Shown here: positions 1-19,174 of the stretch, one piece after another
Numbering within the stretch: position 1 is the stretch's first letter
How the letters are laid out: each line of letters starts with the position of its first letter
Assembly (NCBI GenBank): GCA_965644295.1
Contig: CBFFRP010000619.1
Location: forward strand, 1 to 19,174
Length of the DNA stretch: 19,174 nt
DNA from: Paraphysomonas bandaiensis
Lineage: Eukaryota > Protista > Chrysophyceae
Reading direction: 5' to 3'
Position numbers and translations under genes: made by a program
The notes under the pieces: model-generated
Told to the model about the DNA's origin: nothing
What the model saw: the letters and a program-made list of their open reading frames with translations, nothing else
The model's database searches: none

Positions 1-1707
1 TGAAACACATCTACATATATCTGAAAAACACATTGTCATGCTCAACTGCAAAGGGATTTATGTTACAATTCGTTGAAAATGAAATCCCCGATCTGAGCTA
101 CGCAGGAATTGGGGATGTAAATGTTTTGTAAATATTGATTCCAGCCTTCGAAGGAACAATTGGGACAGACATCGTTTATCCGGCTATTTTATGGGTTATC
201 GTGAGGATGGACCGGGTAACATAACCTTTGTCCCGGTACTAAGAGGTTTTGTATTATCAGGACACGTTTCCTTCAATGAATGTATTCCATCACCAGATAA
301 AAAATATTTACAGAAATTGACGAAAATATTCAAAGAAAACGAGACCTCCAGGACGATTGAGAGTTTCAAATACCTCATAGGACTCTTACATATTGGCCCG
401 GATGATGGCCTAACCTGCGTAACAACACAGATAAAAGTGAAAAAAGGACTAATTGCAGCGTACCGTGGACTAGGATAATAGCGGCAGTATTATTCAACTC
501 GACGACCTATACACGCTGCAGACGACGTCTAACGATATACCGAGGAATACACGGAATATAGAGCAGTTGCTCACAAACGTATCAATTCTCGATTCAAAAT
601 TGCATTGACGCGATCAATAAAACTTTTCCACTCTCCAAAAGAAAGGATACTAGAGATACCATCGGGAGCGTGAGCCATAAAAGGAAAGCTTAATTTTAAA
701 ATTAAAAGAAAGCGATATATATGATATAAAATTCAAAGCTCAACTGGTTGCTCAGGGATTCACCCAAATACCTGGCATCGATTACAATGAAACGTACATC
801 CCTGTAGCCAAGAAGGCGACATCACGACGGACCATCATCGCCCTTGCAACTATTGTGAATCTCAAACTCCACCAGAGATCGATTTTACCATCGCTTACAT
901 CAATGCCAACCTTGAGGAAGAAATCTACATATGTATCCCCCTCCATATATGAACATCCCCGATATCAAGGTACTCAGATTATTAAAAAGTATCTACGGAT
1001 CTAAACAAGCCGGTCTAAACTGGTATAAATGTTGTACTAATTTCATGTTAGACATGGGTATACTAGATTAGTATCTGACTCGTGCATATTTAAAAAACAT
1101 ATCGACGGCAGAATTATGCTAATTGCCATGTATGTCGATGACCACATTATCGCGTCGGAGTCAGATATCGACATCCAAGAATTCAAAAGCCTTATCAAAA
1201 AAAAGTTCTAAATCACGGAACTCGGACCCCTGGACTACTACTTAGGCATTTCCATCAATCAGGATTTCGACAAAAATACCACGACGTTCAGCCAGGAGCA
1301 ATATATGTTATCAAACTGCTGGATAAATTTAACATGTCTGACTGCGATTCCATGTCCACACCTATGTTGCTCTCATTTAACTATGATCTACATGAATTCA
1401 ACAATCTATCATACTCAAATCAAAGCTATGTTCAGAATTTCCCCTACAATGAACTCATTCGCTCTTTGATGCACTTAGGTGTGTGTACTCGACCAGAAAT
1501 TGCATTCGCTGTCAATACTTTTGACGATTCTCTGATTTGCCTAATCTAACTGCCTGTATTGCCAAATAAGGACTGACATATTCTGGATCCAACATAACAT
1601 TATCAGGATACTGTGATAGCGGCTGGATGCGATGCCACCTCAATCGACGGTCAACCACTGCATTCACATTCTTTATAGGTAATAGTCTAATATCATGGCA
1701 ATCTCGA
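1..1707 (+). mobile_element. Degenerate Ty1/copia LTR-retrotransposon pol remnant (post-integrase region, reverse transcriptase, start of RNase H)
   Basis: Copia motifs occur in the expected order across several frames with stops and frameshifts. They are GCKCFV...GYFMGY...SGHVSFNE (113-280), [28 protein letters not shown] (~729-812), [31 protein letters not shown], catalytic YVDD (1131-1142), YYLGI, SLMHLGVCTRPEIAFAV, and GYCDSGW...ISWQSR (ends ~1707). No LTR or intact RNase H is seen; the element probably continues left of the window. Confidence 0.93.
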
Positions 1708-3065
1708 TTATACAATTGTATATGTGAATTATAGTGTTCAATGAAATATATCACAAACTGAATTAATAATAGTATATGTTGAAGATTCAATAACGTTATT
1801 ATAACGATCGTCATTGTAAATTCTAAAAATCAGTATACCGAAAAGGACACGGCACTGTGCGCAGTGTTTCTGTGCATCACGTATGAACCATACAACTGTA
1901 TATATATGATACAGAAAAATACTGGCACATATAACGTCCACAACATGAGTAGTTGTCTGTAGTAATAATATATATCTTTGGTGTCAGAAAAGTAAACCGC
2001 TGTATATAGAGCAATCACAGCAGGAACTAGTGCTCAATGTAATGGTTATGTGGTGCACACAATATACCCAGCGTTACACACACATCATGACAACTGAATC
2101 AATGCTAATGTTAAGCAACAAAGGCTTACTATGAGGTTGCATGTCGAGTGAAAAGGGTCCTATATACGGGATCTCAGTTCAAAGCAGAGGAAGTCATCGA
2201 TCTTCGGATGATTGACGGAACCAATAATTGTTACATCTTCATCCATCGTCAACGATAATTTAAGAGGCCTTTAACCCTAGAAAATTTACTGTAGAGGAAC
2301 TCAGGTTGAAACCTCATTGCCGAACTGAAAAATTATAACTGATACGAAACCAGAGGGTTATTTAAAGCTTCTGTGGCACTAAATGCCTTCAGACACACCA
2401 AAAAACCTAACACAAAGTCATCATAACTTAGTGTAGTTTCTGTATACTGGAATACAGCTTTATCGAGTCTTTTGATTTGATCTTTTGGTGTCTTCTGTGT
2501 GGTTATACCCCTATGTAATAAACCAGCTTCCTTGGAATGTAAAGCGCTGAACAGATGAAAGTGTAAGCGACAACAACCAACACAGAGCGAGATCAAGCTG
2601 ATAAAAGAATGATGATCCAGTTGCGTGCCTCACAATCACACAGTAAGTAAATCCATACATCACAGAAGGAGTAGCCACATCCCATCGTTCCGTGCATCTC
2701 TTCATCATATACCACAACATACAACTAAATTATGACACTCGACTAATCATCATCAAGAGTTCGGAAATCATTGGATATTAATCGATTCCTGTATTGTATT
2801 GTAGTGGTTGTGCACACAACATAAGAATACCGTCTATACACCAAATACAGCAGCATTCAAGATTTCGGATTGACCAATCCAGAGAGTATATATATTTTTA
2901 GATCAATATCATTGGATGAAATTCTGTTCGCAAGGGAACACCAGCAGCAGCATATGACTTCCGACTTCCTACCTACAGTCTCAATGTTGAAGAACAAAAT
3001 ACATCCCACTTCAGCAAATCAAATACGATAGCTAGCATATAATTGGTTGTAACGTGGAAAAGATC

Positions 3066-6040: not shown

Positions 6041-9000
6041 CAGAAGACCCTGCCTGCAGGCAAATGATCTCGTAACCATCACTTTCTATGACCTGCGCGC
6101 CATTTTGAGATGTCTTCGCGCTTCTAGCAGAGATGGTTGCTGCAATACCACATACAGTGGGCGCAGCGAATAGCTCCTGAACACTAATAGACTCTCCACT
6201 ATCACTCCGTATCCGGAATAACAACTGAATTGCCGAAACAGAATTCCCCCTAGGGCGAAAAACGAGTCACTTTGGCAGCATATTTGAGATTCTTCCATTT
6301 GCAACACAGCAGCAAACGATTCCACAATGGCAGCCTCTAATCTCGACGAAGGATCAACTTTTTTAGAATCAAGGATGGATGATGATAAAAATGCAGAGGA
6401 CACTGCATCTGGAAGAGGAAGTCGACTTCGTTCTACCTTTCCGTTGGCACTGAGTGGTATCTCATCTAATACAACAAAATGGCGTGGAATCATATAGTCA
6501 GTAAGTGTATCTTGACATAACTCTCGCAAATTCTGAAACACCTCATCATGACTAGCATCACTATAATCGCTGCTACCCTCTATATCTACAGATCCATTCA
6601 TGTCACTCAATACGAGATACGCACACAGGGCATTATGATGCACTGTCAACGCAGCCGATGATACTCGCTTGTCCTTCATCAGCACACGCTCGATCTCACC
6701 TAGCTCTATGCGGAACCCATTTACCTTGACCTGTGAATCCTCACGCCCCAATATCTCTATATTTCCACAGGGACGCACACGGCCCAAATCGCCAGTGCGA
6801 AACAGCGACTCACCAGTTCGCGGGTGCACAATGAACTGGTATCGAGTCCTCTCGGGGTTATTATAATATCCTTTTGCTACACCTGCCCCACCAATATAGA
6901 TACCACCAGTCACCCATGATTCACAGTTGTCCAGTTCCTCATTGAGAACATACATTGTTTGGTTGCGGAGTGGTCGACCATACGGTATGCTGGACCACCC
7001 CGGTGGTATTCCAGATCCCTCTTTACTCAGCTCAAACATATTCGACCATATTGCCGCTTCTGTCGCCCCGCCCATACTAATGATGCGAATATCGGGACAT
7101 GCAGACACGGCACGTATACGATTTGGAAGAGACAACGGAATCCAGTCTCCACTCATATATACCAGACGCAAGCTAGCAGGGAGCTGAGTATTTGAATACT
7201 CACAGTGTGTCACCATCAACTCCATGAAAGCTGGAACAGTGTCCCATATTGTAATCATCTCTGCTGTCAGAATCCCTATCCATTCTTCAGGATCTGGGGG
7301 GTGTATACAATTAGACGAAGGGAGCACGACCGTGCCGCCGGCGGAGAGCAAGCCGAATATATCATACACCGACAAATCGAAACTTAATGATGACAAGCCA
7401 AACACCCTATCTGACGATGTCACCGAAAATCGCTCATTCAAATCCGCAATAGTATTCACAGCTCCCTGGTGGTGGCAGCACACACCCTTCGGTACACCCG
7501 TAGAACCGGAGGTGTAAATTAGATACGCAAGGTCAGTTGGATCTACTCGTTTTCTACGACACAGAACTGAATCTACATCAGGTGTGTGGTGCTTCCCATG
7601 CCGAGTTATTACTGAGTTCACATCCATGACTGGAATGCTAATTTCGTTAAGCCACTGACAGGACGACAGTACACGAGACTGAGTCAAAACTGCTGCGCAC
7701 TTGCTAAGATCCAGAACCTGAGTAACACGATGCTCCGGCCACGAACGACTATCCATAGGAAGATAGACACATTGAGCCATATGCACACCCAGTACAGCTA
7801 CAACTTGTTCCCAACCCTTATCCATCAAAACTGCCACCACGCTTGACTCAATCAAAGAAGGCACTTTATTGAGCAATTCACTAGCTACTATCGTAGCATA
7901 TCGCTGCATATCAGAGTACATAACGACATCTCTCTCACCCAACTCATCGTAACTTACAACCGCAGGCATAATATCACAATTCGTCGCAGTCTTACATACA
8001 CGAATAAACCCTTCGTGCATGAGATCTTTGCTGAGAGGACATGGAGGTGAAACGGGCACAGGCGATGGAGGGGGAGCGATTGCTTCGGACACAGGGTTCT
8101 TCCACACCTGGGGGTCATCCGAGCAAACCAAATCAAGCATCGCAGAGTACGTCTTGTGCATCCCATGAACTACTTCATCTGGAAAAGTTCCCTCTACTAT
8201 ATCCATTGAAGCACATGCTGTACCGGCGGGGTCTGATTTAATTGCATTGACGCAGGCCGTATGAGGTACTCTTTCAGAGAAGAATCTCTCTTTGAACATC
8301 CAATTTCTTGACGACACTTGCTGATTTCCCTGTTCGACGCCAATCGGAGTTGTGAAAATGAATGGGGCTACCGCCTGAAACGTTTTACCCTGAACTCTAT
8401 TTAGCTCTTGCATAACCTCTACGCCACTCATGCATGCATGCTCTAGATTCTGAGAGAGTTCTTTGGCAACACGTTGGATGGCTACAAGAAAAGACAATGG
8501 TTCGTCTGTGCTCTTTCGGGTCATATCAATGTCACACAGTATGGTCGAACTACAGTTGCCAACAGTCTTATTCACATCGGGGTGCACCTGGTGTCTCAGA
8601 CACTGTAAAATATTTAGCAAAAACCTTTTTGTCCTTGACCAATGGGCAATAGTTAGCGAATAGACAGCAAGCAACATTGCAGGGATGGTTACTGAATGAG
8701 CGGCACAATTAGCTTTCGCGTTATTCCATTCATCCACTGACAGCCACCTGTGCCAATTACAAAACTTTCCAGAGTCAGACAATTGATTAGGTGCTATCAC
8801 TGAAGAAGGCAAATCAGGCCCCGAAGGGAGCGTAGACAATCTCCCAAGCCAAAATTCTTTTGCACGCATGTACTCTGTTGAGAGGGGTAAGGACTCCTCA
8901 ATGGCGTGGGAGTAATCAGCGAACATTAGCCTTGAAGGAGCTGGTAATTCCTTCATGATAGCTTTGCCGCTGTGAGCGCGCCCAGTTTTTCCGTCTACAC

Positions 9001-12000
9001 AAGACAGAGCTGCTCTGTATATGGTTGACAGTTCCTGGCGGAATATGAGATCTCCCATTGCGTCCATTAGGAATAATGAAACTGTGACGTGGATAACAGA
9101 CGTGGTGGGGCCAATATGCGTGACACGAAAATCAAAGAGCGGCCATTTGTACACATTCGGCCCATTGGCAGTCATGTCAGCTCTGGTTTCTAGAGCACTA
9201 GCCTCCGCAGCAGCAGCATCTCCAGTCCACGGTGCAACATGTGACACCTTATACTTTGGACAAAAATTAACCATCATCATTTGTCCACTTGGAAGCACAT
9301 AGGATCGGAAATGGGGATGCCTTCCCACGAAAAGGGTAACAGCTTCCTCGAGTGTATGCACATCAACAGGTCCAGGATCAGAGCCCCCATCCTCCGCACC
9401 CATAACCCATTCGAAATAAATCTGGGGCGCAATGCCTTTCTGGGAATAAGAAGATGTGTGTAGACCGACAAAGTGAGCCTTATTGATACCGATAAGTGGA
9501 TAAGCGTTGAGCATACTATGCTTTCCAGGTTTTATCTCAAAAATAGGTTTACCGCTTGACTTATCACTACTCGTCCCCAGAACAGTGGGACCAGATGACG
9601 CTGCCGACGTGGCAACACCAACAAGCGACTTGATAGTAGGATTGTTGAATATCTGAGGTACTGTGACAACGATTCCTCTCTTTCGAGCATGCGACACTAC
9701 TTGCATTGAACGTAAGGAGTCCCCACCAAGGGAAAAGAAATTAGAAACCGGAAGTATAGAGACAAAATCAATACCAAGAATTTCTGCCCATACATTGCGT
9801 AATGCTCTTGCCAATGGATTGCGGGAGAAATATGCTTCAGAATCGACGTCCGCAATACTATCGTCATAGCAAGACTCCGCATCAGTGATTGTCGGCAAAC
9901 GACTTCTCTCCACTTTTCCGTTTGAACTGAGGGGAAGTTCATCCAAACACATAAAATACCGCGGAATCATATAGTCGGTTAATGAATCCTTACACAGACC
10001 ACGAAGACTTACAATAATGTCGTCATGTGGGGCGGAATAATCATCACCATAATCATTTAATACGAGATACGCACACAGGGCATTATGATGCACTGTCAAC
10101 GCAGCCGATGATACTCGCTTGTCCTTCATCAGCACACGCTCGATCTCACCTAGCTCTATGCGGAACCCATTTACCTTGACCTGTGAATCCTCACGCCCCA
10201 ATATCTCTATATTTCCACAGGGACGCACACGGCCCAAATCGCCAGTGCGAAACAGCGACTCACCAGTTCGCGGGTGCACAATGAACTGGTATCGAGTCCT
10301 CTCGGGGTTATTATAATATCCTTTTGCTACACCTGCCCCACCAATATAGATACCACCAGTCACCCATGATTCACAGTTGTCCAGTTCCTCATTGAGAACA
10401 TACATTGTTTGGTTGCGGAGTGGTCGACCATACGGTATGCTGGACCACCCCGGTGGTATTCCAGATCCCTCTTTACTCAGCTCAAACATATTCGACCATA
10501 TTGCCGCTTCTGTCGCCCCGCCCATACTAATGATGCGAATATCGGGACATGCAGACACGGCACGTATACGATTTGGAAGAGACAACGGAATCCAGTCTCC
10601 ACTCATATATACCAGGCGCAAGCTAGCAGGGAGCTGAGTATTTGAATACTCACAGTGTGTCACCATCAACTCCATGAAAGCTGGAACAGTGTCCCATATT
10701 GTAATCATCTCTGCTGTCAGAATCCCTATCCATTCTTCAGGATCTGGGGGGTGTATACAATTAGACGAAGGGAGCACGACCGTGCCGCCGGCGGAGAGCA
10801 AGCCGAATATATCATACACCGACAAATCGAAACTTAATGATGACAAGCCAAACACCCTATCTGACGATGTCACCGAAAATCGCTCATTCAAATCCGCAAT
10901 AGTATTCACAGCTCCCTGGTGGTGGCAGCACACACCCTTCGGTACACCCGTAGAACCGGAGGTGTAAATTAGATACGCAAGGTCAGTTGGATCTACTCGT
11001 TTTCTACGACACAGAACTGAATCTACATCAGGTGTGTGGTGCTTCCCATGCCGAGTTATTACTGAGTTCACATCCATGACTGGAATGCTAATTTCGTTAA
11101 GCCACTGACAGGACGACAGTACACGAGACTGAGTCAAAACTGCTGCGCACTTGCTAAGATCCAGAACCTGAGTAACACGATGCTCCGGCCACGAACGACT
11201 ATCCATAGGAAGATAGACACATTGAGCCATATGCACACCCAGTACAGCTACAACTTGTTCCCAACCCTTATCCATCAAAACTGCCACCACGCTTGACTCA
11301 ATCAAAGAAGGCACTTTATTGAGCAATTCACTAGCTACTATCGTAGCATATCGCTGCATATCAGAGTACATAACGACATCTCTCTCACCCAACTCATCGT
11401 AACTTACAACCGCAGGCATAATATCACAATTCGTCGCAGTCTTACATACACGAATAAACCCTTCGTGCATGAGATCTTTGCTGAGAGGACATGGAGGTGA
11501 AACAGGCACAGGCGATGGAGGGGGAGCGATTGCTTCGGACACAGGGTTCTTCCACACCTGGGGGTCATCCGAGCAAACCAAATCAAGCATCGCAGAGTAC
11601 GTCTTGTGAATGCTCTCAATTACAGTTGTATCCAGTTTATCAGAAAAAGATAGCTTGCAGGTGAATTTATCCTGGGACGCATGAATGACATTGCAAACTA
11701 AGTAATTAGCAAATATTTCATCAGGATGGATGTCAATACGGTTGATAGAACAATATACTTCCTCAAGTACGAACTTTTTATTACTTTCGCTGTCCATGAT
11801 CATATGCCCACCAGGGACGGCGTGAACGTTGAATGCTCCAGCAGACACTTTTTTCCAATGCCATACAGCTTCTTCACCAATATCACTTCGTCCTACTAGG
11901 GTGGTGTCATCACATCCATAGAAAACAGTCACAGGACAATGCAACTGTTGTGCGCTGTCCGGATCCCACACATAAATGCTCTCTACCAGTAAATCAGCCC

Positions 12001-15000
12001 GTGCAGTGGTAAGGAAAAATTCAGCATCAGAAGTAGAAAGGTCAAGAAAATCTTTAGAATACCAGCCCTGGTTGGTGAGATCCTTCATCAGAGATCCTGT
12101 GTCAGCCAAAGGGTCCGCATCAGATTTGATGTGCATCGGGGCTGCTTCAGCAAGTACAAATATGTGGTCAGGACCAGTACCGTAAGCTTTTGTCACGGCA
12201 AGAGCAAGCTCATAGGCTACAAGAGCACCCATCGAATATCCGAGGAAACAAAAATGATTAGGATGCCCCGATTCTGTCCACAGCATTTCTCGCAATGAAA
12301 TCAACAAGTGGTTTACAATACTAGATAAGTCCTTCATAACAGGTTCAGAAAGTTTCGTGCCGTGACCAGGGAGATCGACACTAACGAGCTCAACATTCCA
12401 CACACTCGTTGCGTCATTGCATTGGGCCATGTTGGTTAGCACGTCTTTCCAACCCGTGAATTGAGCAGAGCTTCCACCAGCAGTGTGGAAACAGAACAGG
12501 GTCATTTTCCTTTTTGCGCCCCCGGCTAAGTAATTACCTTCGTTGTTACTGGACCATTCACAGAATGCCACATTACACATCTCTGACGATTTTTTCACAG
12601 AAGAAATATTTATCCTATTCATAGCAAGTTGCTCCTCCAGCTCGCTCTGTTTTAAGACATCCAATAAGGTCATCTCATACCATGATAGCTTCGAGTGTAA
12701 ACTAAATGTAATGTGCTGGCTGGATGATGCCTTATCCAGAAAATCGATGGAGAAGAGTGATGAGCTACTGTGGCGTTTAACTGCAACTAAAAAGGCGCTC
12801 AACATACACGAATTCAAGGACTCCAACTTATAATAAGAACAATTAGATAAGGCCCTTGTGAACTGAGTCCCAGCAATTGCCTTTACCAATTCAACCCGGG
12901 TACAATGTTTGACTCCCGTTGCAACCTGACGCTCAGGAAGTATAGGATTGGGAAGTCGTGGGTAATGGGGAGTGGTATGAAGCTTTCTAGAAACTTTTCG
13001 CTCAAAGTCCTGCATTGTCGTTTTAAGGCCATCATCTGAATCGATGCAGGACGCAAGAGCCTGAAGCGACATTTCCACTGAACAAAGTAATCCTTCAAGG
13101 AAGGACGAGTTATATTCCAAACATTCTGAAGTTGCAATCAATTGCGCAGACTCACTCCCAACAACAGTTCTGACTGAAAGTGGGCAACCAATGCGATCGA
13201 TCAAGGAGTCATTTTTAATATAAAGATCACCCACAAATTCACAATTGAAAAGCTGCTCATGCTGATAATCAAAAACTACAGGAAACAAAGACCCTTTGAC
13301 AGGGGTAGATGTCAACCTTTGAATCTCTGTTAAAGGAAGATTCTCATGCTTTATGCAATCCAGTAGGTGCTTGTGAACTCTTGCCAAGAATGACTTCACA
13401 TTTTCATCATTGTCCCACGTCAGCCGAACAGGGAACGTATTTATGACAGGACCAATTATTTCTCCTAGGTCTTGTACCGCGGCCGATCGTCCTGTGGCAG
13501 TGCAGCCGTATAAAACTCCTGGTGTGTCAGAGTCTAATGTAACCATAGATTTGTACACCACTGACCATGATGCATGAAAAAAAGATGCCAATGTCACACC
13601 AACTAGACTAGCTGCTTTTCTGCATACAATAAGCAAATCTGATGACAAGTACTTAGCGCAGCGCATAACTTCTTCATCAGAGGTATTAATCATAAGAGGG
13701 GGCATATTATTAAATACATTCGGTATCTTCCATCCTCTCAAACTATTACTCCAAAACGCTTTAAGAAGATCCAGATCGTGGGCTTCCGGAAATTCCAACA
13801 AGCTATTTTCATACATTGCATAGGCTTCGAATGATGGAAACAGCTGACATTGCTCATCGAGGTAGTGGCCTTGTACACTGGCATGTCGCGTGTAGTTATC
13901 ACGTAAACAGTGCAATAAATTGCGTATCGACCAACCGTCCACTATGGCATGGTGCACAGAAAATATCAGTGCATACTCTACTGGTTGACTCTGTGACAAT
14001 TTCACCAAGCTGACTTTAAACGACAGTGGATCTCCCGGATGCACACATCCTGATCGCCGATGCTCCTGTATTTTTGATTTTACAGTCCCATCCTTACTAT
14101 TAGACACTGTAGATGAGAATTCAAACCACGAATATTGAGCCTCATAGTGTGACTTGTTGAGGCCGATTACATGTGGCTTCCACACAAGTTGCATTGGCGG
14201 GGATGCTTCCATATCAAAAGACGATCTCAGAGAGGCGTGGTCAATAATAGTGTCAACCCAAGCGTTACGAAACGCAGCAACATCAAACTTAACACGATTC
14301 ATCCTACCATCAGAAGTGATGTACCATGAAAACGTTTCAAGGAATGTCCCACTAGAAGGGTCTGACATGTAATGAAATAGCATCGCTTGTTGCATACGAG
14401 TTGCAGGAAACATCGCTTCATATTCCTTGGGCATATCAAATGTAACTTTCCTATTGTGTTGTTGCAATTCCAGCAGCAGAGAGTTTGCACGGGATTTTCG
14501 TCTACCCTTTTGCGAACCCAGCTGCAACTGCTGAATGCAAGATGCGACACTCGCCACAGTAGGATATTCAAAGACAAGAGCCGACGGAAGATCAATTCCT
14601 CCAAACTCCCTTGATAGCTCGTTACGCACCTGCACAGCACCTAAAGAGTCAATACCTAGCGAAACCAAACTATCGTGATCATCAAAGTCAATCGACGATG
14701 GCAGAACAGATGATATAGCGCATCGAACAGTTTCCAGAAGTGATGCAGAAAGTGCGATGTTTGAGGCGGATACAGCTGAACCCTGATCAGGTCGATTCTT
14801 TCGGCTAACTGAAAAGAGGCTTCCCTTGTGTCGCCACTTATACAGTGCAGGAGAATAATTAGTGTCCACACGACACGACACTACAGTTGACAATGACCAC
14901 CGACGAAGCCATTGTAAGGCTGAGGTAACCTGCTCCCTTAAGTAAAGAACATCCGAATCACGCTTTCGTTCCGGTAAAATAGAAGAAAACCACCCAAACT

Positions 15001-18000
15001 TCCCGGAAGGAAGATTGCTGGCTGCGGCAATGGCCATGGCAAACTTTTGAAGCGTTTTCCCTGGACCAACTTCGACAATTGCATACCCTTCATTTCGAAA
15101 CGACTTCAATAATCCCATAAAAACATCACAAAATTGAACTGTATTCGTTATGTGACGGGACCAATACTCCACAGTCAAGTCTGATTTTTCCACATCCAAA
15201 CCAGTCACAGTAGATATCATTCTACAGTGGGGTGTCTTCGATTCTATTATAACAGCACCGGCAGCGTTGAGGTTTTTCACAGTCCGTATAAACGCTATAG
15301 CGGCGTTGGATAACAACGGGCTATGAAACGAATGAGTTAACAGAAGTTTCTTTGACGAGCATCCCAGCAAAGATATTACTCGCAGAACATTCTCGTCCAC
15401 TCCAGCGATCACACAGGACAAATGCCCATTCGCCGCGGCTACTGCCGGCCGCAGCTCTGAATTAGGCCACGCTATAGACTCAATCGCCTCCTCCACCATT
15501 GTTTGAGAAGCTCGTACGGCATACATTGCACCACGTTCACCGGTGGAAGATGGCGTATGCTCGACACACCACGCTCGAATTGCAACTAATTGGAGAGCTG
15601 TCTTTATATCAAGAGCGCCTGCGCATACAGCTGCGGCATACTCTCCCAGAGAGTGACCTATTACCACTGTGGGAAAAACGCCACTACTCTCCCAGAGCCG
15701 ACACAGACTCACCTCTAAAGAATACAACATACACTGTGTGTACAGGGCCTCGTTCCTCTGAATCTGAGACTGAGTTTCTATTGAGAGATTGGCGGATAGA
15801 ATATCAACAAGCGAAACGGAATCATCACACCCTAGCAGTTGTCGTATATCACTAAAGCATTGTGAACAGAGTGTAAATGTATTCCGAAAGACTTCTTCAG
15901 AATCGAACAATTCCATACCCAATCCTGTGGACAGCAAATCCGGCACGCCTTGCCCAGTAAATAAGAACACAACCTCTGAGGACGATCCGTCCTCAGAACA
16001 AGAATCTGAATTACCTGAGTTCGCTATGACACTACTGCTATGTTGCTGCAATAACACATGTGAGTTCGTTCCACCCGACCCAAAGGAACTAACACCAGCT
16101 ATTGGTGGCCTTCCTGTTCGAGTTATCAGGGGTGTAGACGTGACCGGAAACTCTACCGCACGCTGTGTAGACAAGTCTATCGCAGGGTTAACTTTTTTGA
16201 AGTGTATATTGGGAGGAACTGAACTGTGTCGAAGTGACATAACAGCTTTAATAAGTCCTGCTAAACCCGCGGCACCCTCTAAGTGCCCTATATTTGACTT
16301 AACTGCACCAAGAATAAGTGCGCTGGCATCACCAGTTGCACAATTATTGAGGAACACATCGCGAATAGCACTGAATTCGATAGGGTCTCCCAGAGCAGTG
16401 CCTGTACCATGTGTTTCAATATAACTGACCTCATCAGGAGCTACCCTCCCTCGGGATAACGCTTCCTGTAGAAGCGCCTGCTGGCATTGTCCATTAGGTG
16501 CAGTGAAAGATGCACTTTTTCCATCCTGATTAGCAGCAGTAGCCTTGATGACTGCTAAAATGGGTGGACCTACACCTGCGGCATAGTCTGCCTCAGCGTC
16601 AGCAAGTCGTCGCAGAACAACTGCACCAGCCCCTTCACCCCTCACGTACCCGTTCGCGGCTGAGTCAAATACTTTGCACTTACCATCAGGAGATAACATT
16701 TGCGAACCTTGCCGAATCTGCACAAAAATATGAATAAGATTTGCACTATTCGCAGAAACATGTGGCTGCTTACCTCCAGTGCATATGGTGCGAGCAATAG
16801 GTCTGCTGACATTACAAGAGCAGTGCTACATTCCCCACCTGCTAGTGCTGAGCAAGCCATGTGTACCGCAACGAGTGAAGACGAGCATGCGGTGTCCACT
16901 ACCATTGAAGGACCAGTAAGATTTAGGAGGAAAGAGAGACGGTTTGCAGCAGCTGCAGTCGATGTTCCAGTGCTTGCGTAGGGTCCAATGGCACACTCAC
17001 TTGTTGTACATATACTGGCATCCACATGTGCACGCATCTCCATTCCTGCCCAGAGCGGGTTGCACATACCAACGTATACCCCTACATCTTTTCCATCCGC
17101 ACTGTTGATGAAATGGTGGGAACAACGCAGTGCTTCATATCCAACTTCCAACAGCAGTCTCTGGTGGGGGTCCATACCGTCCACTTCCGCTGGGCTGAGG
17201 CCAAAGTACCGGGCATCAAAGCTCTCCGCAAAAAAATCATCAATCACTCCAGCGCGGCCGCTGAACCCATCCCATCCCCATGTGTCAGGGATTTCAACAA
17301 CAGCATCCACAGCGTGCTGAAGCATATTGTAGAACTCCTCGGGACTGTTTCCTCCACCCGGGAACCGGCAAGACATACCTACAATGGCGTATTCACAAGT
17401 TGGCGGTAGATGAGTGGAGGTGGCAGGTACAGTTGTTGGAAAAGAAGATATCCGATGCTGCTTAAAATATGACAGCACAGCCCGGGGTGTAGGGTAGTCG
17501 AATAGAAAAGTCGAAGACAGAGGGCCGGCTCCAGTGCGCTCAGAAATCAGAGAAGCTAACTGCTGCATTTGCAACGAGTCAAGTCCAAGAGCCATAAAAG
17601 GTTGACTCAAAAACGAGTCCATTGAAATGTGAGATGCACCATCGGGAGATCCTAAAGTCTCATAAACAAGTTGTGAAAGTGCTTCCGCATCAATACTTTT
17701 TGCGCTTGCTAGCAAACGATGCGTAACACCAGTAGCATTTTGAGAAGAGCGTGATAAACTATACCGTATTAACACACCATTTCCTTCATTCAGCATATCC
17801 TCTGGCCGGAAATCAGGAAGTACAGCAACAACAGTAGCACCGCCATCACAGTGGAAACGAATAGTGGGGTCTCTTAGAGACAGTGCATGCTCGGCAAATG
17901 GTGTACCCGACGACAGGTACGCCGAGCAGCGTGTCACCGCTACAACATCAGATATAGTATCTGTCATAAAAGCCTGAAGAAGCATAAAGTCCCTCAAAGC

Positions 18001-18444
18001 TTTTCCAATTTGCATATTTTTGACGGATGGGTTCACAGCTACCGCTATCAATTGAAGAAACTCACCAGTGGGAGTACCAAACGTGTGATATGTTGAAAAT
18101 TTCATACGGGATATAATATCATCCACAGAATTTATCCTTTGAGTATATATCACGCCCATAACTCGATTGTCTACAGTCGCCACCCAAGTAGTGTGAGAGT
18201 CTGACGTTAATCGAAGGTGAATTTGTTGAGCATTGATACGCATACATTTATCCCAGCAATTCTCCTCGAGCTCCAGTAGATTATCCAGATCATCTAAATT
18301 TGCTTTTCTTATCGCGAATGGCATTTGTTGTACATCTGATATGCATATCTTATCGTTATTTACAAGATCTTGCAGTGTTACGCTCCTCAGAAAGAAACAT
18401 TTCTCAGCAAGAGCACAAAAGATTGGCCACATATCACTGGTCAT
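5195..18444 (-). CDS. Hybrid type I PKS-NRPS megasynthase, ~4381 aa after frameshift repair. Exons 18444-16774, 16717-5992 (frameshift at ~6246-6250), 5942-5195
   Basis: ORFs 16642-18456, 6086-16723, 5988-6224 and 5195-6082 join by two GT-AG introns and one added base into 13146 nt (4382 codons including stop). Recognisable GNAT, ACP, KS, AT, C, TE, A, PCP and Cy motifs occur in colinear order. The first in-frame ATG is at 18444; the ORF-track start at 18456 is a TTG. Confidence 0.93.
5943..5991 (-). other. Spliceosomal intron in the terminal TE, 49 nt, phase 2
   Basis: On the minus strand, TG|GTAAGT...ATTCACAG|T. Removal gives GATGL-C-YSDL, a typical TE N-terminal motif, and deletes the TAA at 5990-5988. 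Confidence 0.9.
6130..6340 (-). other. PCP2 (thiolation domain) split by a 1-nt frameshift
   Basis: DSFFALGG is in one frame and NSVSAIQLLFRIRSDSGESISVQELFAAPTV in another. Adding one base at the G5 run (plus strand C5, 6246-6250) restores FFALGGNS. Confidence 0.88.
6420..8020 (-). other. Adenylation domain A2, Cys-type
   Basis: Motifs LAYLIYTSGSTGVPKG, SFDLSVYDIFG, SGDWIP, GGATEAAIWS, IPYGRPL, FRTGDLG, QVKVNGFRIELGEIE and NGK. FDLSVYD, SGDW and GGATEAxIWS are hallmarks of HMWP2/PchE-like Cys-activating A domains. Confidence 0.92.
6609..8158. repeat. 1550-bp direct repeat, copy covering the A2 core
   Basis: Matches 10059-11608 (offset 3450). I found only two mismatches by eye, 7166/10616 and 8054/11504, both synonymous. 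Confidence 0.95.
8140..9505 (-). other. Heterocyclization (Cy)-type condensation domain with altered signature residues
   Basis: Cy-family blocks RHPHFR...GQM, WPLFDFRVT, FADY, FWLGRLSTLPSGPDLP, RHQVHPDVNKTVG, SGVEVMQEL and PFIFTT are present. There is no HHxxxDG, and the DxxxxDxxS position reads SLFLMDAMG. Confidence 0.85.
9620..9815 (-). other. PCP1 (thiolation domain)
   Basis: NFFSLGGDSLRSMQV...IFNNPTIKSL; Ser codon at 9718-9716. Confidence 0.93.
9890..11470 (-). other. Adenylation domain A1, Cys-type
   Basis: Same core motifs as A2 (identical protein over the repeat); A10 motif LPLSSNGKVER. Confidence 0.92.
10059..11608. repeat. 1550-bp direct repeat, copy covering the A1 core
   Basis: Matches 6609-8158; duplicated ORFs in the ORF track show the same 3450 offset. 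Confidence 0.95.
11745..12510 (-). other. Internal thioesterase domain resembling type II (editing) TEs
   Basis: Motifs LFCFHTAGGSSAQFTGW, VDLPGHG, FLGYSMGALVAYE (Ser codon 12235-12233), RADL, CPVTVFYGCDD, W-K and PGGH (His 11806-11804). Confidence 0.9.
12550..12990 (-). other. Degenerate C-terminal lobe of a Cy-like domain, resuming after the TE at ~11745-11590
   Basis: LHTTPHYPRLP...FTRALSNCSYYKLESLNSCMLSAFLVAVKRHSSSSLFSIDFL aligns by eye with LSTLPSGPDLP...WNNAKANCAAHSVTIPAMLLAVYSLTIAHWSRTKRFLLNIL in the downstream Cy. Confidence 0.6.
13050..14420 (-). other. Condensation domain
   Basis: Motifs FPATRMQQAMLFH, HASLRSSF, HHAIVDGWS (His codon 13954-13952), IIGPVINTFPVR and HENLPLTEIQ. Confidence 0.92.
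14530..14740 (-). other. ACP of the PKS extension module
   Basis: LVSLGIDSLGAVQVRNEL...LVFEYPTV; Ser codon 14647-14645. Confidence 0.92.
14990..15975 (-). other. Acyltransferase domain, probably malonyl-CoA specific
   Basis: VFLFTGQG, GHSLGEYAA (Ser 15652-15650), conserved Arg in VAIRA, HSFHS (close to the malonyl HAFH motif, not YASH) and EVGPG. Confidence 0.9.
16045..17394 (-). other. Ketosynthase domain, catalytic triad intact, interrupted by one intron
   Basis: AIVGMSCRFPGG, MDPHQRLLLE, DTACSSS (Cys 16887-16885), ETHGTGT, KSNIGHLEGAAG and VSSFGSGGTNSH. Confidence 0.96.
16718..16773 (-). other. Spliceosomal intron in the KS, 56 nt, phase 0
   Basis: On the minus strand, GAG|GTAAGC...TTTTTGTGCAG|ATT joins LAPYALE to IRQGSQMLSPDGKCK, restoring a continuous KS. 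Confidence 0.92.
17465..17690 (-). other. Loading ACP
   Basis: PFMALGLDSLQMQQL...FLFDYPTP; Ser codon 17577-17575. Confidence 0.92.
17761..18315 (-). other. GNAT-like PKS loading domain (CurA/GphF/SxtA-type acyl-ACP decarboxylase)
   Basis: IRKANLDDLDNLLELEENCW, GVIYTQRI, LQLIAVAVNP...IGKAL, VVAVTRC, DPTIRFH..GA and FRPED..N.GNGVLIRY match the family pattern. Thr (17934-17932) and His (17853-17851) lie at the catalytic positions. Confidence 0.88.
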
Positions 18445-18866
18445 CGTCTGTACCAATCAACAGTAAAACAATGTTCCAGAGGAGGTCAGGACATTTATAT
18501 ATCGGATAACAATGAAGTCGTAATTAACGAATGAAGCTGACGGACATATACGCATTCCAGTATACATATGGCATATATATACTATATACATTGTACACTG
18601 CCGTATCTGGTGGACCAAGACCATACATACACACTGCTTTGTACTCGTACGCACCAGTGTGGCTGTACAGCATGTTACATCCTCATAAAAACTGTAGTAT
18701 ACCATGTATACGGAGGTATACGCATCACACAGTGGTGTATAGTGTCCAACCAAATGCGGCATTATGAGGAAACTGAAAAATCGCTGCATTAACATCGACA
18801 CGCACATCCTATACACAGTTTCTCTGATGGGAGACAGGCGTCACAAGGTATTACATACACAACAGA
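18445..18866. promoter_or_regulatory. Putative bidirectional promoter region (422 bp) between the PKS-NRPS and MFS genes
   Basis: Head-to-head ATGs at 18444 (-) and 18867 (+); non-coding TA/CA-rich composition. Inferred from gene geometry only. Confidence 0.5.
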
Positions 18867-19174
18867 ATGCAAGGTAGCGGGCAAAAGGACGGCTCGCAAT
18901 TGTTGGAGAGACTTATCTCTGACGAGGAGAGTGAGGAAGTCAAAGTCGATACAGTGGACCCGAAATGGAATATATTAGATCTCATTAAATTAGCACTATG
19001 TTGGGCACTGACGCTAACAACGTCGACCCTTCTTACTACTGTTGGCCCATTAGCTGCAAAAAAAATTGGAGCAAGTGATATTTTAGCTCCTTTTACAATC
19101 GGTACATTTTTAATTGGTGCAGCTGTATCATCTGTGCCATCGGGACCTCTCTTTCGTAAATATGGTCGCTATGG
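18867..19174 (+). CDS. MFS transporter, 5' part (runs off the window)
   Basis: Not in the ORF track because no stop is reached. Translation from ATG 18867 (in-frame TGA upstream at 18825) gives MQGSGQKDGSQLLERLISDEESEEVKVDTVDPKWNILDLIKLALCWALTLTTSTLLTTVGPLAAKKIGASDILAPFTIGTFLIGAAVSSVPSGPLFRKYGRY. This has two hydrophobic helices followed by an MFS motif-A-like loop (GPLFRKYGR). Confidence 0.82.
   Translation, partial: MQGSGQKDGSQLLERLISDEESEEVKVDTVDPKWNILDLIKLALCWALTLTTSTLLTTVGPLAAKKIGASDILAPFTIGTFLIGAAVSSVPSGPLFRKYGRY

What the first reader, a model, noticed from the sequence alone, without database searches (positions are those of the whole stretch)
17465..18444. CurA-type GNAT-like loading module with no upstream methyltransferase/adaptor, in an intron-containing gene
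Seen: VAVTRC, RFH, FRPED and CW motifs are intact. Only ~45 residues precede the domain, and only 422 bp separate the gene from the divergent MFS, leaving no room for an MT. Known: this family decarboxylates malonyl-type acyl-ACPs via a Thr/His pair and usually follows an MT or pseudo-MT; dinoflagellate SxtA is the familiar eukaryotic case. Inference: a minimal acetyl-priming module, with the loading ACP charged by the module AT or a trans malonyltransferase.
Basis: partly seen in the sequence, partly recalled or inferred. Interest (0 to 1): 0.72.

Follow-up and report, generated by a model that had tools for sequence, protein, structure and literature searches.

The report
MT-less GNAT starter module, diatom PKS-NRPS
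The first exon of a transcribed giant polyketide-peptide synthase gene in a silica-forming marine alga encodes a CurA/SxtA-type "GNAT-like" decarboxylase and carrier protein that most likely make the acetyl starter; it has no methyltransferase in front, but that layout is common in this family.

Summary
Observation confirmed. On the minus strand, ATG 18444 opens a GNAT-like domain, a loading ACP (Ser290) and the first KS.

- **Family.** The domain matches SxtA, GphF and CurA GNAT-like decarboxylases by sequence (E 4e-32 to 2e-25). A confident model matches them by structure (Z 28, against 19 or less for ordinary acetyltransferases).
- **Catalytic residues.** Thr171, His198 and Arg213 align with CurA Thr355, His389 and Arg404.
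- **No MT.** RNA contigs from three runs end 48-113 nt upstream of the ATG and cover an in-frame TGA. Two of them skip the 56-nt intron, and none shows an upstream joint. The divergent MFS gene starts 422 bp away. Relatives on other eukaryotic contigs have the same layout.
- **"Usually follows an MT" is overstated.** About half of the 147 best-matching domains among 1.84 billion representative proteins are N-terminal.
- **The leader is not filler.** The 40 leading residues are a conserved pre-GNAT element that superposes on SxtA 465-503, the end of its MT region.
- **Clade.** The window falls in a strongly supported (100/99) clade in which 32 of 33 sampled GNAT domains are N-terminal. Every member I examined in context is eukaryotic. 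The clade includes two more PKS starters in this genome.

Acetyl priming by malonyl-ACP decarboxylation is inferred, not shown. This is a new member of a known kind, of moderate interest. The scan has noted GNAT starters elsewhere in this genome.

The parts
18445..18557 (-). 5' untranslated region as seen in RNA contigs. It contains an in-frame TGA at 18457-18459.
   Evidence: X1 contig ends at 18557. X4 and X6 contigs end at 18492. No joints or loose ends upstream. Stop codon.
18325..18444 (-). Residues 1-40: conserved pre-GNAT element (helix 6-14, strand 17-19; motif W..F..LA..G/C-F-F). It is equivalent to SxtA 465-503, the end of the AprA-MT2-like Pfam domain.
   Evidence: AF2 block-mean pLDDT 83-97 over residues 1-40. 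VIA alignment: model 1-232 to 7uci 465-705. hhalign P 5.7e-4. A1 consensus AxxGLF. The same stub occurs in many GNAT-first proteins.
17749..18324 (-). GNAT-like decarboxylase core (residues 41-232) with Thr171 (17932-17934), His198 (17851-17853) and Arg213 (17806-17808).
17467..17712 (-). Loading ACP (about residues 245-326). Phosphopantetheine Ser290 lies in LGLDSLQ (17575-17577).
   Evidence: Pfam PP-binding E 1.7e-6. PDB ACP hits. Serine position.
16774..17388 (-). N-terminal part of the first KS (exon 1 ends at 16774). Active-site Cys520 lies in TACSSS (16885-16887), so this is a condensing KS, not a KS-Q.
   Evidence: Pfam PF00109 E 2.3e-47. Cysteine position.
16718..16773 (-). 56-nt GT..AG phase-0 intron inside the KS domain. 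Gene calls of relatives break at the same KS position.
   Evidence: Sequence. Skipped in X1 and X4 RNA contigs. Relatives' gene calls end at KS profile positions 207-213. The gap to the next called gene is 50-54 nt in L004 and L005.
6086..16717 (-). Exon 2: KS C-terminal part, AT (GHSLGE, HSFH), ACP, C, embedded TE, A, T, second condensation-type domain, A, T. This is the only AT in the gene.
   Evidence: Pfam. AT motifs.
18867..19174 (+). Divergent gene for a likely MFS transporter, cut by the contig end.
   Evidence: Translation. PF07690 E 7.5e-4, below the cut-off on this fragment. Separate RNA contigs start at 18629 (X1) and 18801 (X7). Contig ends at 19174.

Best explanation
Exon 1 encodes the chain-initiation didomain of a hybrid PKS-NRPS: a short conserved leader, a GNAT-like decarboxylase and a loading ACP, followed directly by KS-AT-ACP. 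The loading ACP is malonylated, most likely by the gene's single cis AT or by the cell's malonyl-CoA:ACP transacylase. The GNAT-like domain decarboxylates malonyl-S-ACP to acetyl-S-ACP using His198 and Thr171. The acetyl group passes to Cys520 of KS1 and is extended once with malonate before hand-over to the NRPS modules. There is no methyltransferase, so the starter stays unbranched. Shown: domain identity, conserved catalytic residues, domain order, the true 5' end and the intron. Inferred: substrate, decarboxylase activity and the source of the malonyl group.
For: - Sequence homology to SxtA, GphF and CurA GNAT-like domains: E 3.6e-32 to 1.9e-25.
- AF2 model pLDDT 92.6, pTM 0.90.
- Closest structures: GphF Z 28.5 (rmsd 1.3 A over 188 residues), CurA Z 27.9, SxtA MT-decarboxylase Z 27.7 over 227 residues. 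Ordinary acetyltransferases score Z 19 or less.
- Thr171, His198 and Arg213 align with CurA Thr355, His389 and Arg404.
- His198 is invariant and Thr171 is kept in 90% or more of 111 aligned domains.
- An ACP with DSL and a KS with TACSSS follow. The AT has GHSLGE and HSFH, close to the malonyl-type HAFH signature.
- RNA contigs end at 18492-18557, cover the in-frame TGA, skip the intron and show no upstream joint.
- Relatives have the same layout with unrelated divergent neighbours: an Argonaute/Piwi gene upstream of the Tara homologue (L002-L004), and a different neighbourhood containing a TBCC gene at L005.
- No AprA-MT2-like domain was found in the 62.5-Mb assembly.
- The literature assigns decarboxylase function to these domains (PMC8302727, PMC10006239).
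Against: - No biochemical data exist for this protein or any member of its clade.
- Substrate choice (malonyl, methylmalonyl or another) cannot be read from the sequence.
- Contig ends are not mapped transcription starts.
- The genome-wide MT search had a silent control and works exon by exon, so a divergent trans-acting MT is not excluded.
- Which enzyme charges the loading ACP is unknown.
- No dedicated Pfam or NCBIfam model exists for the domain. It gives only a sub-threshold Acetyltransf_1 hit.
Confidence: 0.7

Rival explanations
1. The domain acts on a different carboxyacyl-ACP, such as methylmalonyl-ACP giving a propionyl starter, rather than malonyl-ACP.
For: Family members accept methylated malonyl thioesters (GphF, SxtA; my knowledge of Skiba et al. 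2020 and the SxtA work behind 7uci). Nothing or 70 discriminates between substrates.
Against: No MT is present to methylate malonyl-ACP. The only AT carries an HSFH motif, nearer to malonyl-type HAFH than to methylmalonyl-type YASH.
Confidence: 0.12
2. The domain is bifunctional as first proposed for CurA. It decarboxylates malonyl-CoA and transfers acetyl to the loading ACP itself, so no AT is needed for loading.
For: This is the original CurA model (Gu et al. 2007, cited in PMC3075265). The Arg404 equivalent and the CoA-binding GNAT fold are kept.
Against: Later work reclassifies these domains as decarboxylases only (Skiba et al. 2020, as summarised in PMC10006239 and PMC8302727). I could not read the primary paper.
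Confidence: 0.1
3. The domain is an inactive structural relic, like the AprA pseudo-GNAT, and the starter is supplied in another way.
For: Pseudo-GNAT domains exist in this family (PMC13564409).
Against: All invariant and near-invariant family residues, including the Thr/His pair, are present. The model fits the active enzymes at rmsd 1.3-1.5 A. No alternative loading domain is present: the KS has its Cys, and no A or CoA-ligase domain lies upstream.
Confidence: 0.05
4. An MT is present after all, either on an unseen 5' exon or as a separate trans-acting protein.
For: Contig ends are not mapped 5' ends. The contig stops at 19174. The genome-wide MT search had no positive control.
Against: Three independent runs end at 18492-18557 with no loose end or joint, and an in-frame TGA precedes the ATG. 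A divergent gene occupies the upstream DNA here and in relatives. In the careful tree, 32 of the 33 sampled clade members have an N-terminal GNAT.
Confidence: 0.03

Closest known systems
CurA loading module (curacin A, Moorea/Lyngbya): pseudo-MT 'adaptor region'-GNAT_L-ACP_L-KS-AT
   Same: The order GNAT-ACP-KS-AT in a cis-AT module is the same. Thr355, His389 and Arg404 are conserved. Structural match: Z 27.9, rmsd 1.5 A over 191 residues, 30% identity.
   Different: CurA carries about 200 residues of truncated MT in front (its representative P0112 hits PF23525 at 12-194). Here only the last 40 or so residues of that region remain. This gene is eukaryotic and has introns.
SxtA MT-decarboxylase didomain (saxitoxin; PDB 7uci)
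   Same: Best sequence match (E 3.6e-32). Model residues 1-232 align to SxtA 465-705, so the leader is matched as well.
   Different: SxtA has a full MT that methylates malonyl-ACP, giving a propionyl starter, and is followed by an aminotransferase-type domain rather than a KS. Neither feature is present here.
GphF GNAT-like decarboxylase (gephyronic acid; PDB 6mfc)
   Same: Best structural match: Z 28.5, rmsd 1.3 A over 188 residues, 32% identity.
   Different: GphF has Ser in place of the Thr (VSRC), follows an active MT and acts on dimethylmalonyl-ACP.
GNAT-first loading modules of bacterial trans-AT PKSs
   Same: GNAT-ACP-KS with nothing in front, as in representatives P0048, P0071 and P0103. 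[quoted passage not shown]
   Different: Those synthases lack a cis AT. The window's GNAT lies in a different, strongly supported clade (100/99) whose members examined in context are on eukaryotic contigs and have a cis AT.
Chrysochromulina parva 'N-acetyl transferase-KS-C-A(Cys)' PKS-NRPS hybrid (O'Neill 2020, PMC7073580)
   Same: The reported domain order is the same in a marine alga, so this is probably the same gene family.
   Different: It was described only as an N-acetyl transferase on a small contig. I did not compare its sequence here.

Membership tests
GNAT-like decarboxylase of PKS loading modules (CurA/GphF/SxtA GNAT_L) | Significant sequence homology to characterised members | tested here: met
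   E 3.6e-32 (SxtA), 1.7e-25 (GphF), 1.9e-25 (CurA).
GNAT-like decarboxylase of PKS loading modules (CurA/GphF/SxtA GNAT_L) | GNAT fold closer to GNAT_L structures than to ordinary N-acetyltransferases | tested here: met
   Z 27.5-28.5 for 6mfc, 2ree, 7uci and 2ref. The next best hit is serotonin N-acetyltransferase at Z 19.0. Model pLDDT 92.6.
GNAT-like decarboxylase of PKS loading modules (CurA/GphF/SxtA GNAT_L) | Catalytic His (CurA His389) and Thr/Ser (CurA Thr355) | tested here: met
   His198 and Thr171 align to them. His198 is invariant and Thr171 is kept in 90% or more of 111 sequences.
GNAT-like decarboxylase of PKS loading modules (CurA/GphF/SxtA GNAT_L) | Directly followed by a carrier protein at the start of an assembly line | tested here: met
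   ACP with Ser290, then KS with Cys520. The N-terminal position is confirmed by RNA contigs and an upstream stop codon.
   No MT in the transcript, the intergenic ORF or the genome. However, 74-80 of 147 family domains also lack it.
GNAT-like decarboxylase of PKS loading modules (CurA/GphF/SxtA GNAT_L) | Malonyl-type acyl-ACP decarboxylase activity | not testable with these tools
   Needs an enzyme assay.
Ordinary GNAT N-acetyltransferases (Pfam PF00583) | Score above the Pfam gathering cut-off | tested here: not met
   19.0 bits against a cut-off of 20.7; 16.8 bits on the whole exon.
AprA-type pseudo-GNAT (MT1-pseudoGNAT-MT2-ACP) | Flanked by MT1 and MT2 domains | tested here: not met
   No PF23525, PF23526 or PF23589 hit on exon 1. 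The catalytic residues are intact.
KS-Q type loading module of cis-AT PKSs | First KS has Gln in place of the active-site Cys | tested here: not met
   The first KS reads TACSSS, with Cys520.

The most novel reading that the evidence does not exclude
The window represents a eukaryote-restricted, intron-bearing clade of MT-less GNAT-like starter modules heading cis-AT PKS and PKS-NRPS genes in marine protists. The clade includes a silica-forming alga of a group whose model genomes have no type I PKS. It would have been acquired once from bacteria, trimmed stepwise from an MT-GNAT ancestor (MT lost, then the stub lost in one subclade), and is transcribed in the open ocean. Under this reading, abundant phytoplankton make acetate-primed polyketide-peptide hybrids that chemistry has not yet described.
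Probability: 0.4. Interest if true: 0.6.

Novelty: new member of a known kind. Interest (0 to 1): 0.42.

Why it matters
It fixes the true start and the priming logic of a transcribed 4,000-plus-residue PKS-NRPS in a silicifying marine alga. That is the first thing needed to predict or find its product.

CurA-type chain initiation is not confined to bacteria and dinoflagellate SxtA. It heads at least three synthase genes in this genome and a clade of environmental eukaryotic genes. Surveys of model diatom genomes found no type I PKS (PMC4661987, PMC7073580).

For enzymologists, the family-wide tally corrects the view that the MT or adaptor is the rule. It also points to a conserved roughly 40-residue pre-GNAT element worth including in expression constructs.

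Tried and rejected
- **Mixture-model tree.** The PMSF mixture-model tree of all 149 domains did not finish in two 300-s runs. I replaced it with FastTree on all rows and a careful LG+G4 IQ-TREE on 82 rows.
- **Sister-group claim dropped.** FastTree placed the MT-bearing P0002 group as sister to the window's clade (support 89). The careful tree did not recover this, so I make no sister-group or donor claim.
- **Stub tested with a single-sequence HMM.** An HMM of MT C-termini was scored against the leaders of 25 clade members. The window's own leader scored -1.1 bits, not above shuffles, and only 3 of the 25 exceeded the shuffled maximum. The claim rests instead on the profile-profile hit (P 5.7e-4), the shared alignment columns and the structural superposition.
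- **"Vestige of a lost MT" softened.** The same stub occurs in many MT-less proteins and in MT-bearing ones. It may simply be part of the decarboxylase domain.
- **Intergenic ORF.** The ORF at 18460-18816 (minus strand, in frame with the gene) has no Pfam hit.
- **Papers and accessions.** Skiba et al. 2020 could not be read. A search for the WGS prefix MDTF01 found nothing. P0093 has no recorded contig.
- **Spliced protein.** I never joined the exons.
Full report
**1. What is there**

The window is a complete 19,174-bp contig of a 62.5-Mb, 669-contig assembly. On the minus strand an ORF opens after an in-frame TGA at 18457-18459. Its first ATG is at 18444.

Numbering from that ATG, exon 1 (18444-16774, 557 codons) encodes four parts:
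- a 40-residue leader;
- a GNAT-like domain (about residues 41-232);
- an ACP (about residues 245-326, Ser290 in LGLDSLQ);
- the first 205 residues of a KS with an intact TACSSS cysteine (Cys520).

A 56-nt GT..AG phase-0 intron (16773-16718) follows. The frame then continues in a 10.6-kb exon with the rest of the KS, the gene's only AT (GHSLGE, HSFH), ACP, C, an embedded TE, A, T, a second condensation-type domain, A and T. A terminal TE lies in further 3' exons. I searched the exons separately by reference and never built the joined protein.

**2. Check of the observation**

The similarity is not chance.
- phmmer against all PDB sequences returns only four strong GNAT-type hits. They are the SxtA methyltransferase-decarboxylase didomain (7uci and 7ucl, E 3.6e-32), the GphF GNAT-like decarboxylase (6mfc, 1.7e-25) and CurA GNAT_L (2ree, 1.9e-25).
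- In the CurA alignment, Thr171, His198 and Arg213 fall on chain positions that correspond to CurA Thr355, His389 and Arg404. The residue offset comes from the structural alignment.
- In a 111-sequence alignment of the family, His198 is invariant. Thr171, Arg213, Trp64 and 16 other positions are conserved at 90% or more, and all are present in the window's protein.
- An AlphaFold2 model of residues 1-245 is confident (mean pLDDT 92.6, pTM 0.90).
- Structure comparison puts GphF (Z 28.5, rmsd 1.3 A over 188 residues), CurA (Z 27.9) and SxtA (Z 27.7) far above the best ordinary acetyltransferase (Z 19.0).

Pfam has no dedicated model for the domain. The generic Acetyltransf_1 hit is below its cut-off, and NCBIfam gives nothing for the domain.

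**3. Is there really no methyltransferase?**

Five lines of evidence agree.
- (a) *Transcripts.* I laid contigs of four public runs on 15000-19174.
  - A 6,923-nt contig of a culture-labelled run (X1) skips exactly 16718-16773, so it is RNA, and it ends at 18557.
  - A marine metatranscriptome contig (X4) also skips the intron.
  - X4 and a second metatranscriptome (X6) each have a contig ending at 18492.
  - No run shows a joint or a loose end upstream of the ATG.
  - The MFS transcripts are separate contigs starting at 18629 (X1) and 18801 (X7).
  - The 5' UTR is therefore 48-113 nt and contains the in-frame TGA.
- (b) *Upstream DNA.* It is occupied by a divergent gene whose ATG lies 422 bp away. 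The only ORF in between has no family hit.
- (c) *Relatives.* The nearest environmental relatives (39-48% identity in the GNAT domain) begin in the same way. They have 20-60 residues, then GNAT, ACP and KS, and their gene calls stop at KS profile positions 207-213, where this gene's intron sits.
- (d) *Genomic context of relatives.*
  - On Tara Oceans scaffolds the homologue has a divergent Argonaute/Piwi gene upstream. The nearest called gene, a 95-residue ORF on the opposite strand, ends 367 bp before the homologue's start.
  - On another contig the upstream genes are different and include a TBCC gene.
  - In both contigs a 50-54-nt gap at the KS site precedes a 1,600-3,500-residue continuation with AT, C, TE and A domains.
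- (e) *Whole genome.* A six-frame search of the assembly with the AprA-MT2-like model (PF23525) found nothing at E 0.01 or better. The control genomes were also silent, so this search is weak evidence on its own.

**4. What the 40-residue leader is**

The leader is conserved in the window's subclade, with the consensus W..F..LA..G-[FY]-F. Three results link it to the segment just before the GNAT core in MT-GNAT proteins.
- Proteins that do carry an MT have the same motif (consensus AxxGLF) about 25-35 residues before the GNAT core. There it forms the last 40 or so positions of Pfam's MT2-like model.
- A profile-profile comparison of the two segments aligns the motifs with P 5.7e-4, and MAFFT places them in the same columns.
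- The model predicts a helix (6-14) and a strand (17-19) at block-mean pLDDT 83-97. The whole of model residues 1-232 superposes on SxtA 465-705 (227 aligned residues).

A single-sequence HMM test was not significant for the window's own leader, so the sequence evidence is at family level only.

The stub also occurs in many MT-less synthases outside the clade. Others, and the subclade holding this genome's two other starters, begin directly at the GNAT core. I therefore read the leader as a conserved pre-GNAT structural element shared with MT-GNAT didomains. It is compatible with descent from an MT-bearing ancestor but does not prove it.

**5. How unusual is the MT-less format?**

An exhaustive HMMER search of 1.84 billion representative proteins found 782 relatives at E 1e-3 or better.
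- Among the 147 domains in the best 150 proteins, 74-80 start within 100 residues of the N-terminus. Of these, 21-23 are in synthases of 900 residues or more.
- 40 domains follow a full MT2-like domain, and 24 follow a partial one.
- MT-less examples include GNAT-ACP-KS synthases with no cis AT domain (trans-AT type) and GNAT-ACP-KS-AT synthases.
- The literature already states that GNAT-like domains perform on-line decarboxylation of malonyl starters in trans-AT PKSs (PMC8302727). It also states that CurA's N-terminal region is a degenerate MT acting as a lid (PMC10006239).

"Usually follows an MT or pseudo-MT" is thus too strong, and "minimal" is ordinary for the family.

**6. Phylogeny**
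- A careful IQ-TREE (LG+G4, 82 domains) places the window in a clade of 33 rows with 100/99 support. In 32 of the 33, the GNAT is N-terminal.
- On the other side of the tree, MT-bearing and MT-less domains are interleaved, with at least 9 changes forced by well-supported branches.
- FastTree on all 149 rows gives the same clade (50 rows, 49 N-terminal).
- Every clade member I could inspect in context is eukaryotic. These are this intron-bearing gene, the Tara scaffolds (Argonaute, RabGAP-TBC), L005 (MBF1, TBCC) and the 2,744-residue P0043 (BCS1, VTC/SPX and UCH neighbours).
- The same genome holds two more GNAT starters on contig C80, heading open frames of 12,637 and 7,292 residues. Both start at a Met right at the GNAT core and both are in this clade.

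The trees are unrooted and most rows are unnamed. I claim no donor lineage, and I do not claim that the clade is exclusively eukaryotic.

**7. Organism and prior knowledge**
- The genome carries at least seven loci above the Pfam cut-off for the silicon transporter family. This fits earlier scan notes that call it a marine diatom.
- Surveys found no type I PKS in Thalassiosira, Phaeodactylum, Fragilariopsis or Pseudo-nitzschia genomes (PMC4661987, PMC7073580).
- A likely homologue was reported in the haptophyte Chrysochromulina parva as an "N-acetyl transferase, KS, C and A (Cys)" hybrid on a small contig. It was not linked to CurA-type initiation (PMC7073580).
- An Amphidinium carterae transcript with a GNAT domain, repeated C and A domains and two TE domains has also been described (PMC8283056).

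**8. Mechanism and verdict**

The most likely function is chain initiation.
- Malonyl is loaded on ACP_L, plausibly by the single cis AT, whose HSFH motif is close to the malonyl-type HAFH. The alternative is the cell's malonyl-CoA:ACP transacylase.
- The GNAT-like domain decarboxylates malonyl-ACP_L to acetyl-ACP_L through His198 and Thr171.
- KS1 then condenses the acetyl group with malonyl-ACP1.

Domain identity, residue conservation, domain order, 5' end and splicing are shown. Substrate, activity and the loading route are inferred.

Its claimed peculiarity (no MT) is common in the family. This is a new, eukaryotic member of a known kind of loading module.

Noticed in passing
G000:C80:261319-261927 (+) and G000:C80:215597-216163 (-); loci L007, L008: Two more GNAT-first PKS starters in the same genome head open frames of 12,637 and 7,292 residues. 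From the AMTRCS motif through the ACP into the KS, the two copies are almost letter-identical, while their N-terminal halves differ. This suggests recent duplication or gene conversion.
   Followed up: partly
P0002 (environmental protein, 1,429 aa): Unusual tandem starter: stub-GNAT-ACP, then an AprA-like winged helix, an MT2-like domain, a second GNAT and, by the Pfam scan's count of two PP-binding stretches, apparently a second ACP. Both GNAT copies are full-length matches.
   Followed up: partly
window 18457-18555 (-): The longest RNA contig (ending at 18557) includes an in-frame upstream ATG at 18555-18553. It opens a 32-codon uORF that stops at the TGA 12 nt before the main ATG. The shorter contigs (ending at 18492) lack it.
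   Followed up: no
window 18629 (+), run X1 record 2: The contig over the divergent MFS gene starts at 18629 with 36 letters that do not match the window. This could be an upstream exon, a chimeric contig or an adaptor.
   Followed up: no
window 16718-16773; L004 6081-6130; L005 5466-5519: Gene calls of several distant relatives break at the same KS profile position (about 207-213), with 50-56-nt gaps. This implies an old, conserved short intron in the first KS.
   Followed up: partly
window 191-1814: Short ORFs resembling Ty1/copia retrotransposon protein lie at the far end of the contig, in AT-rich DNA (GC 0.37-0.40).
   Followed up: no
window 15000-19174, runs X4, X6, X8: Near-identical (99% or more) spliced transcripts of this gene occur in marine plankton metatranscriptomes from different studies, so the synthase is expressed in the sea.
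   Followed up: partly
G000, several contigs (C348, C406, C398, C150, C149, C298, C405): At least seven loci score above the Pfam cut-off for the silicon transporter family, which fits a diatom or other silicifying stramenopile.
   Followed up: partly
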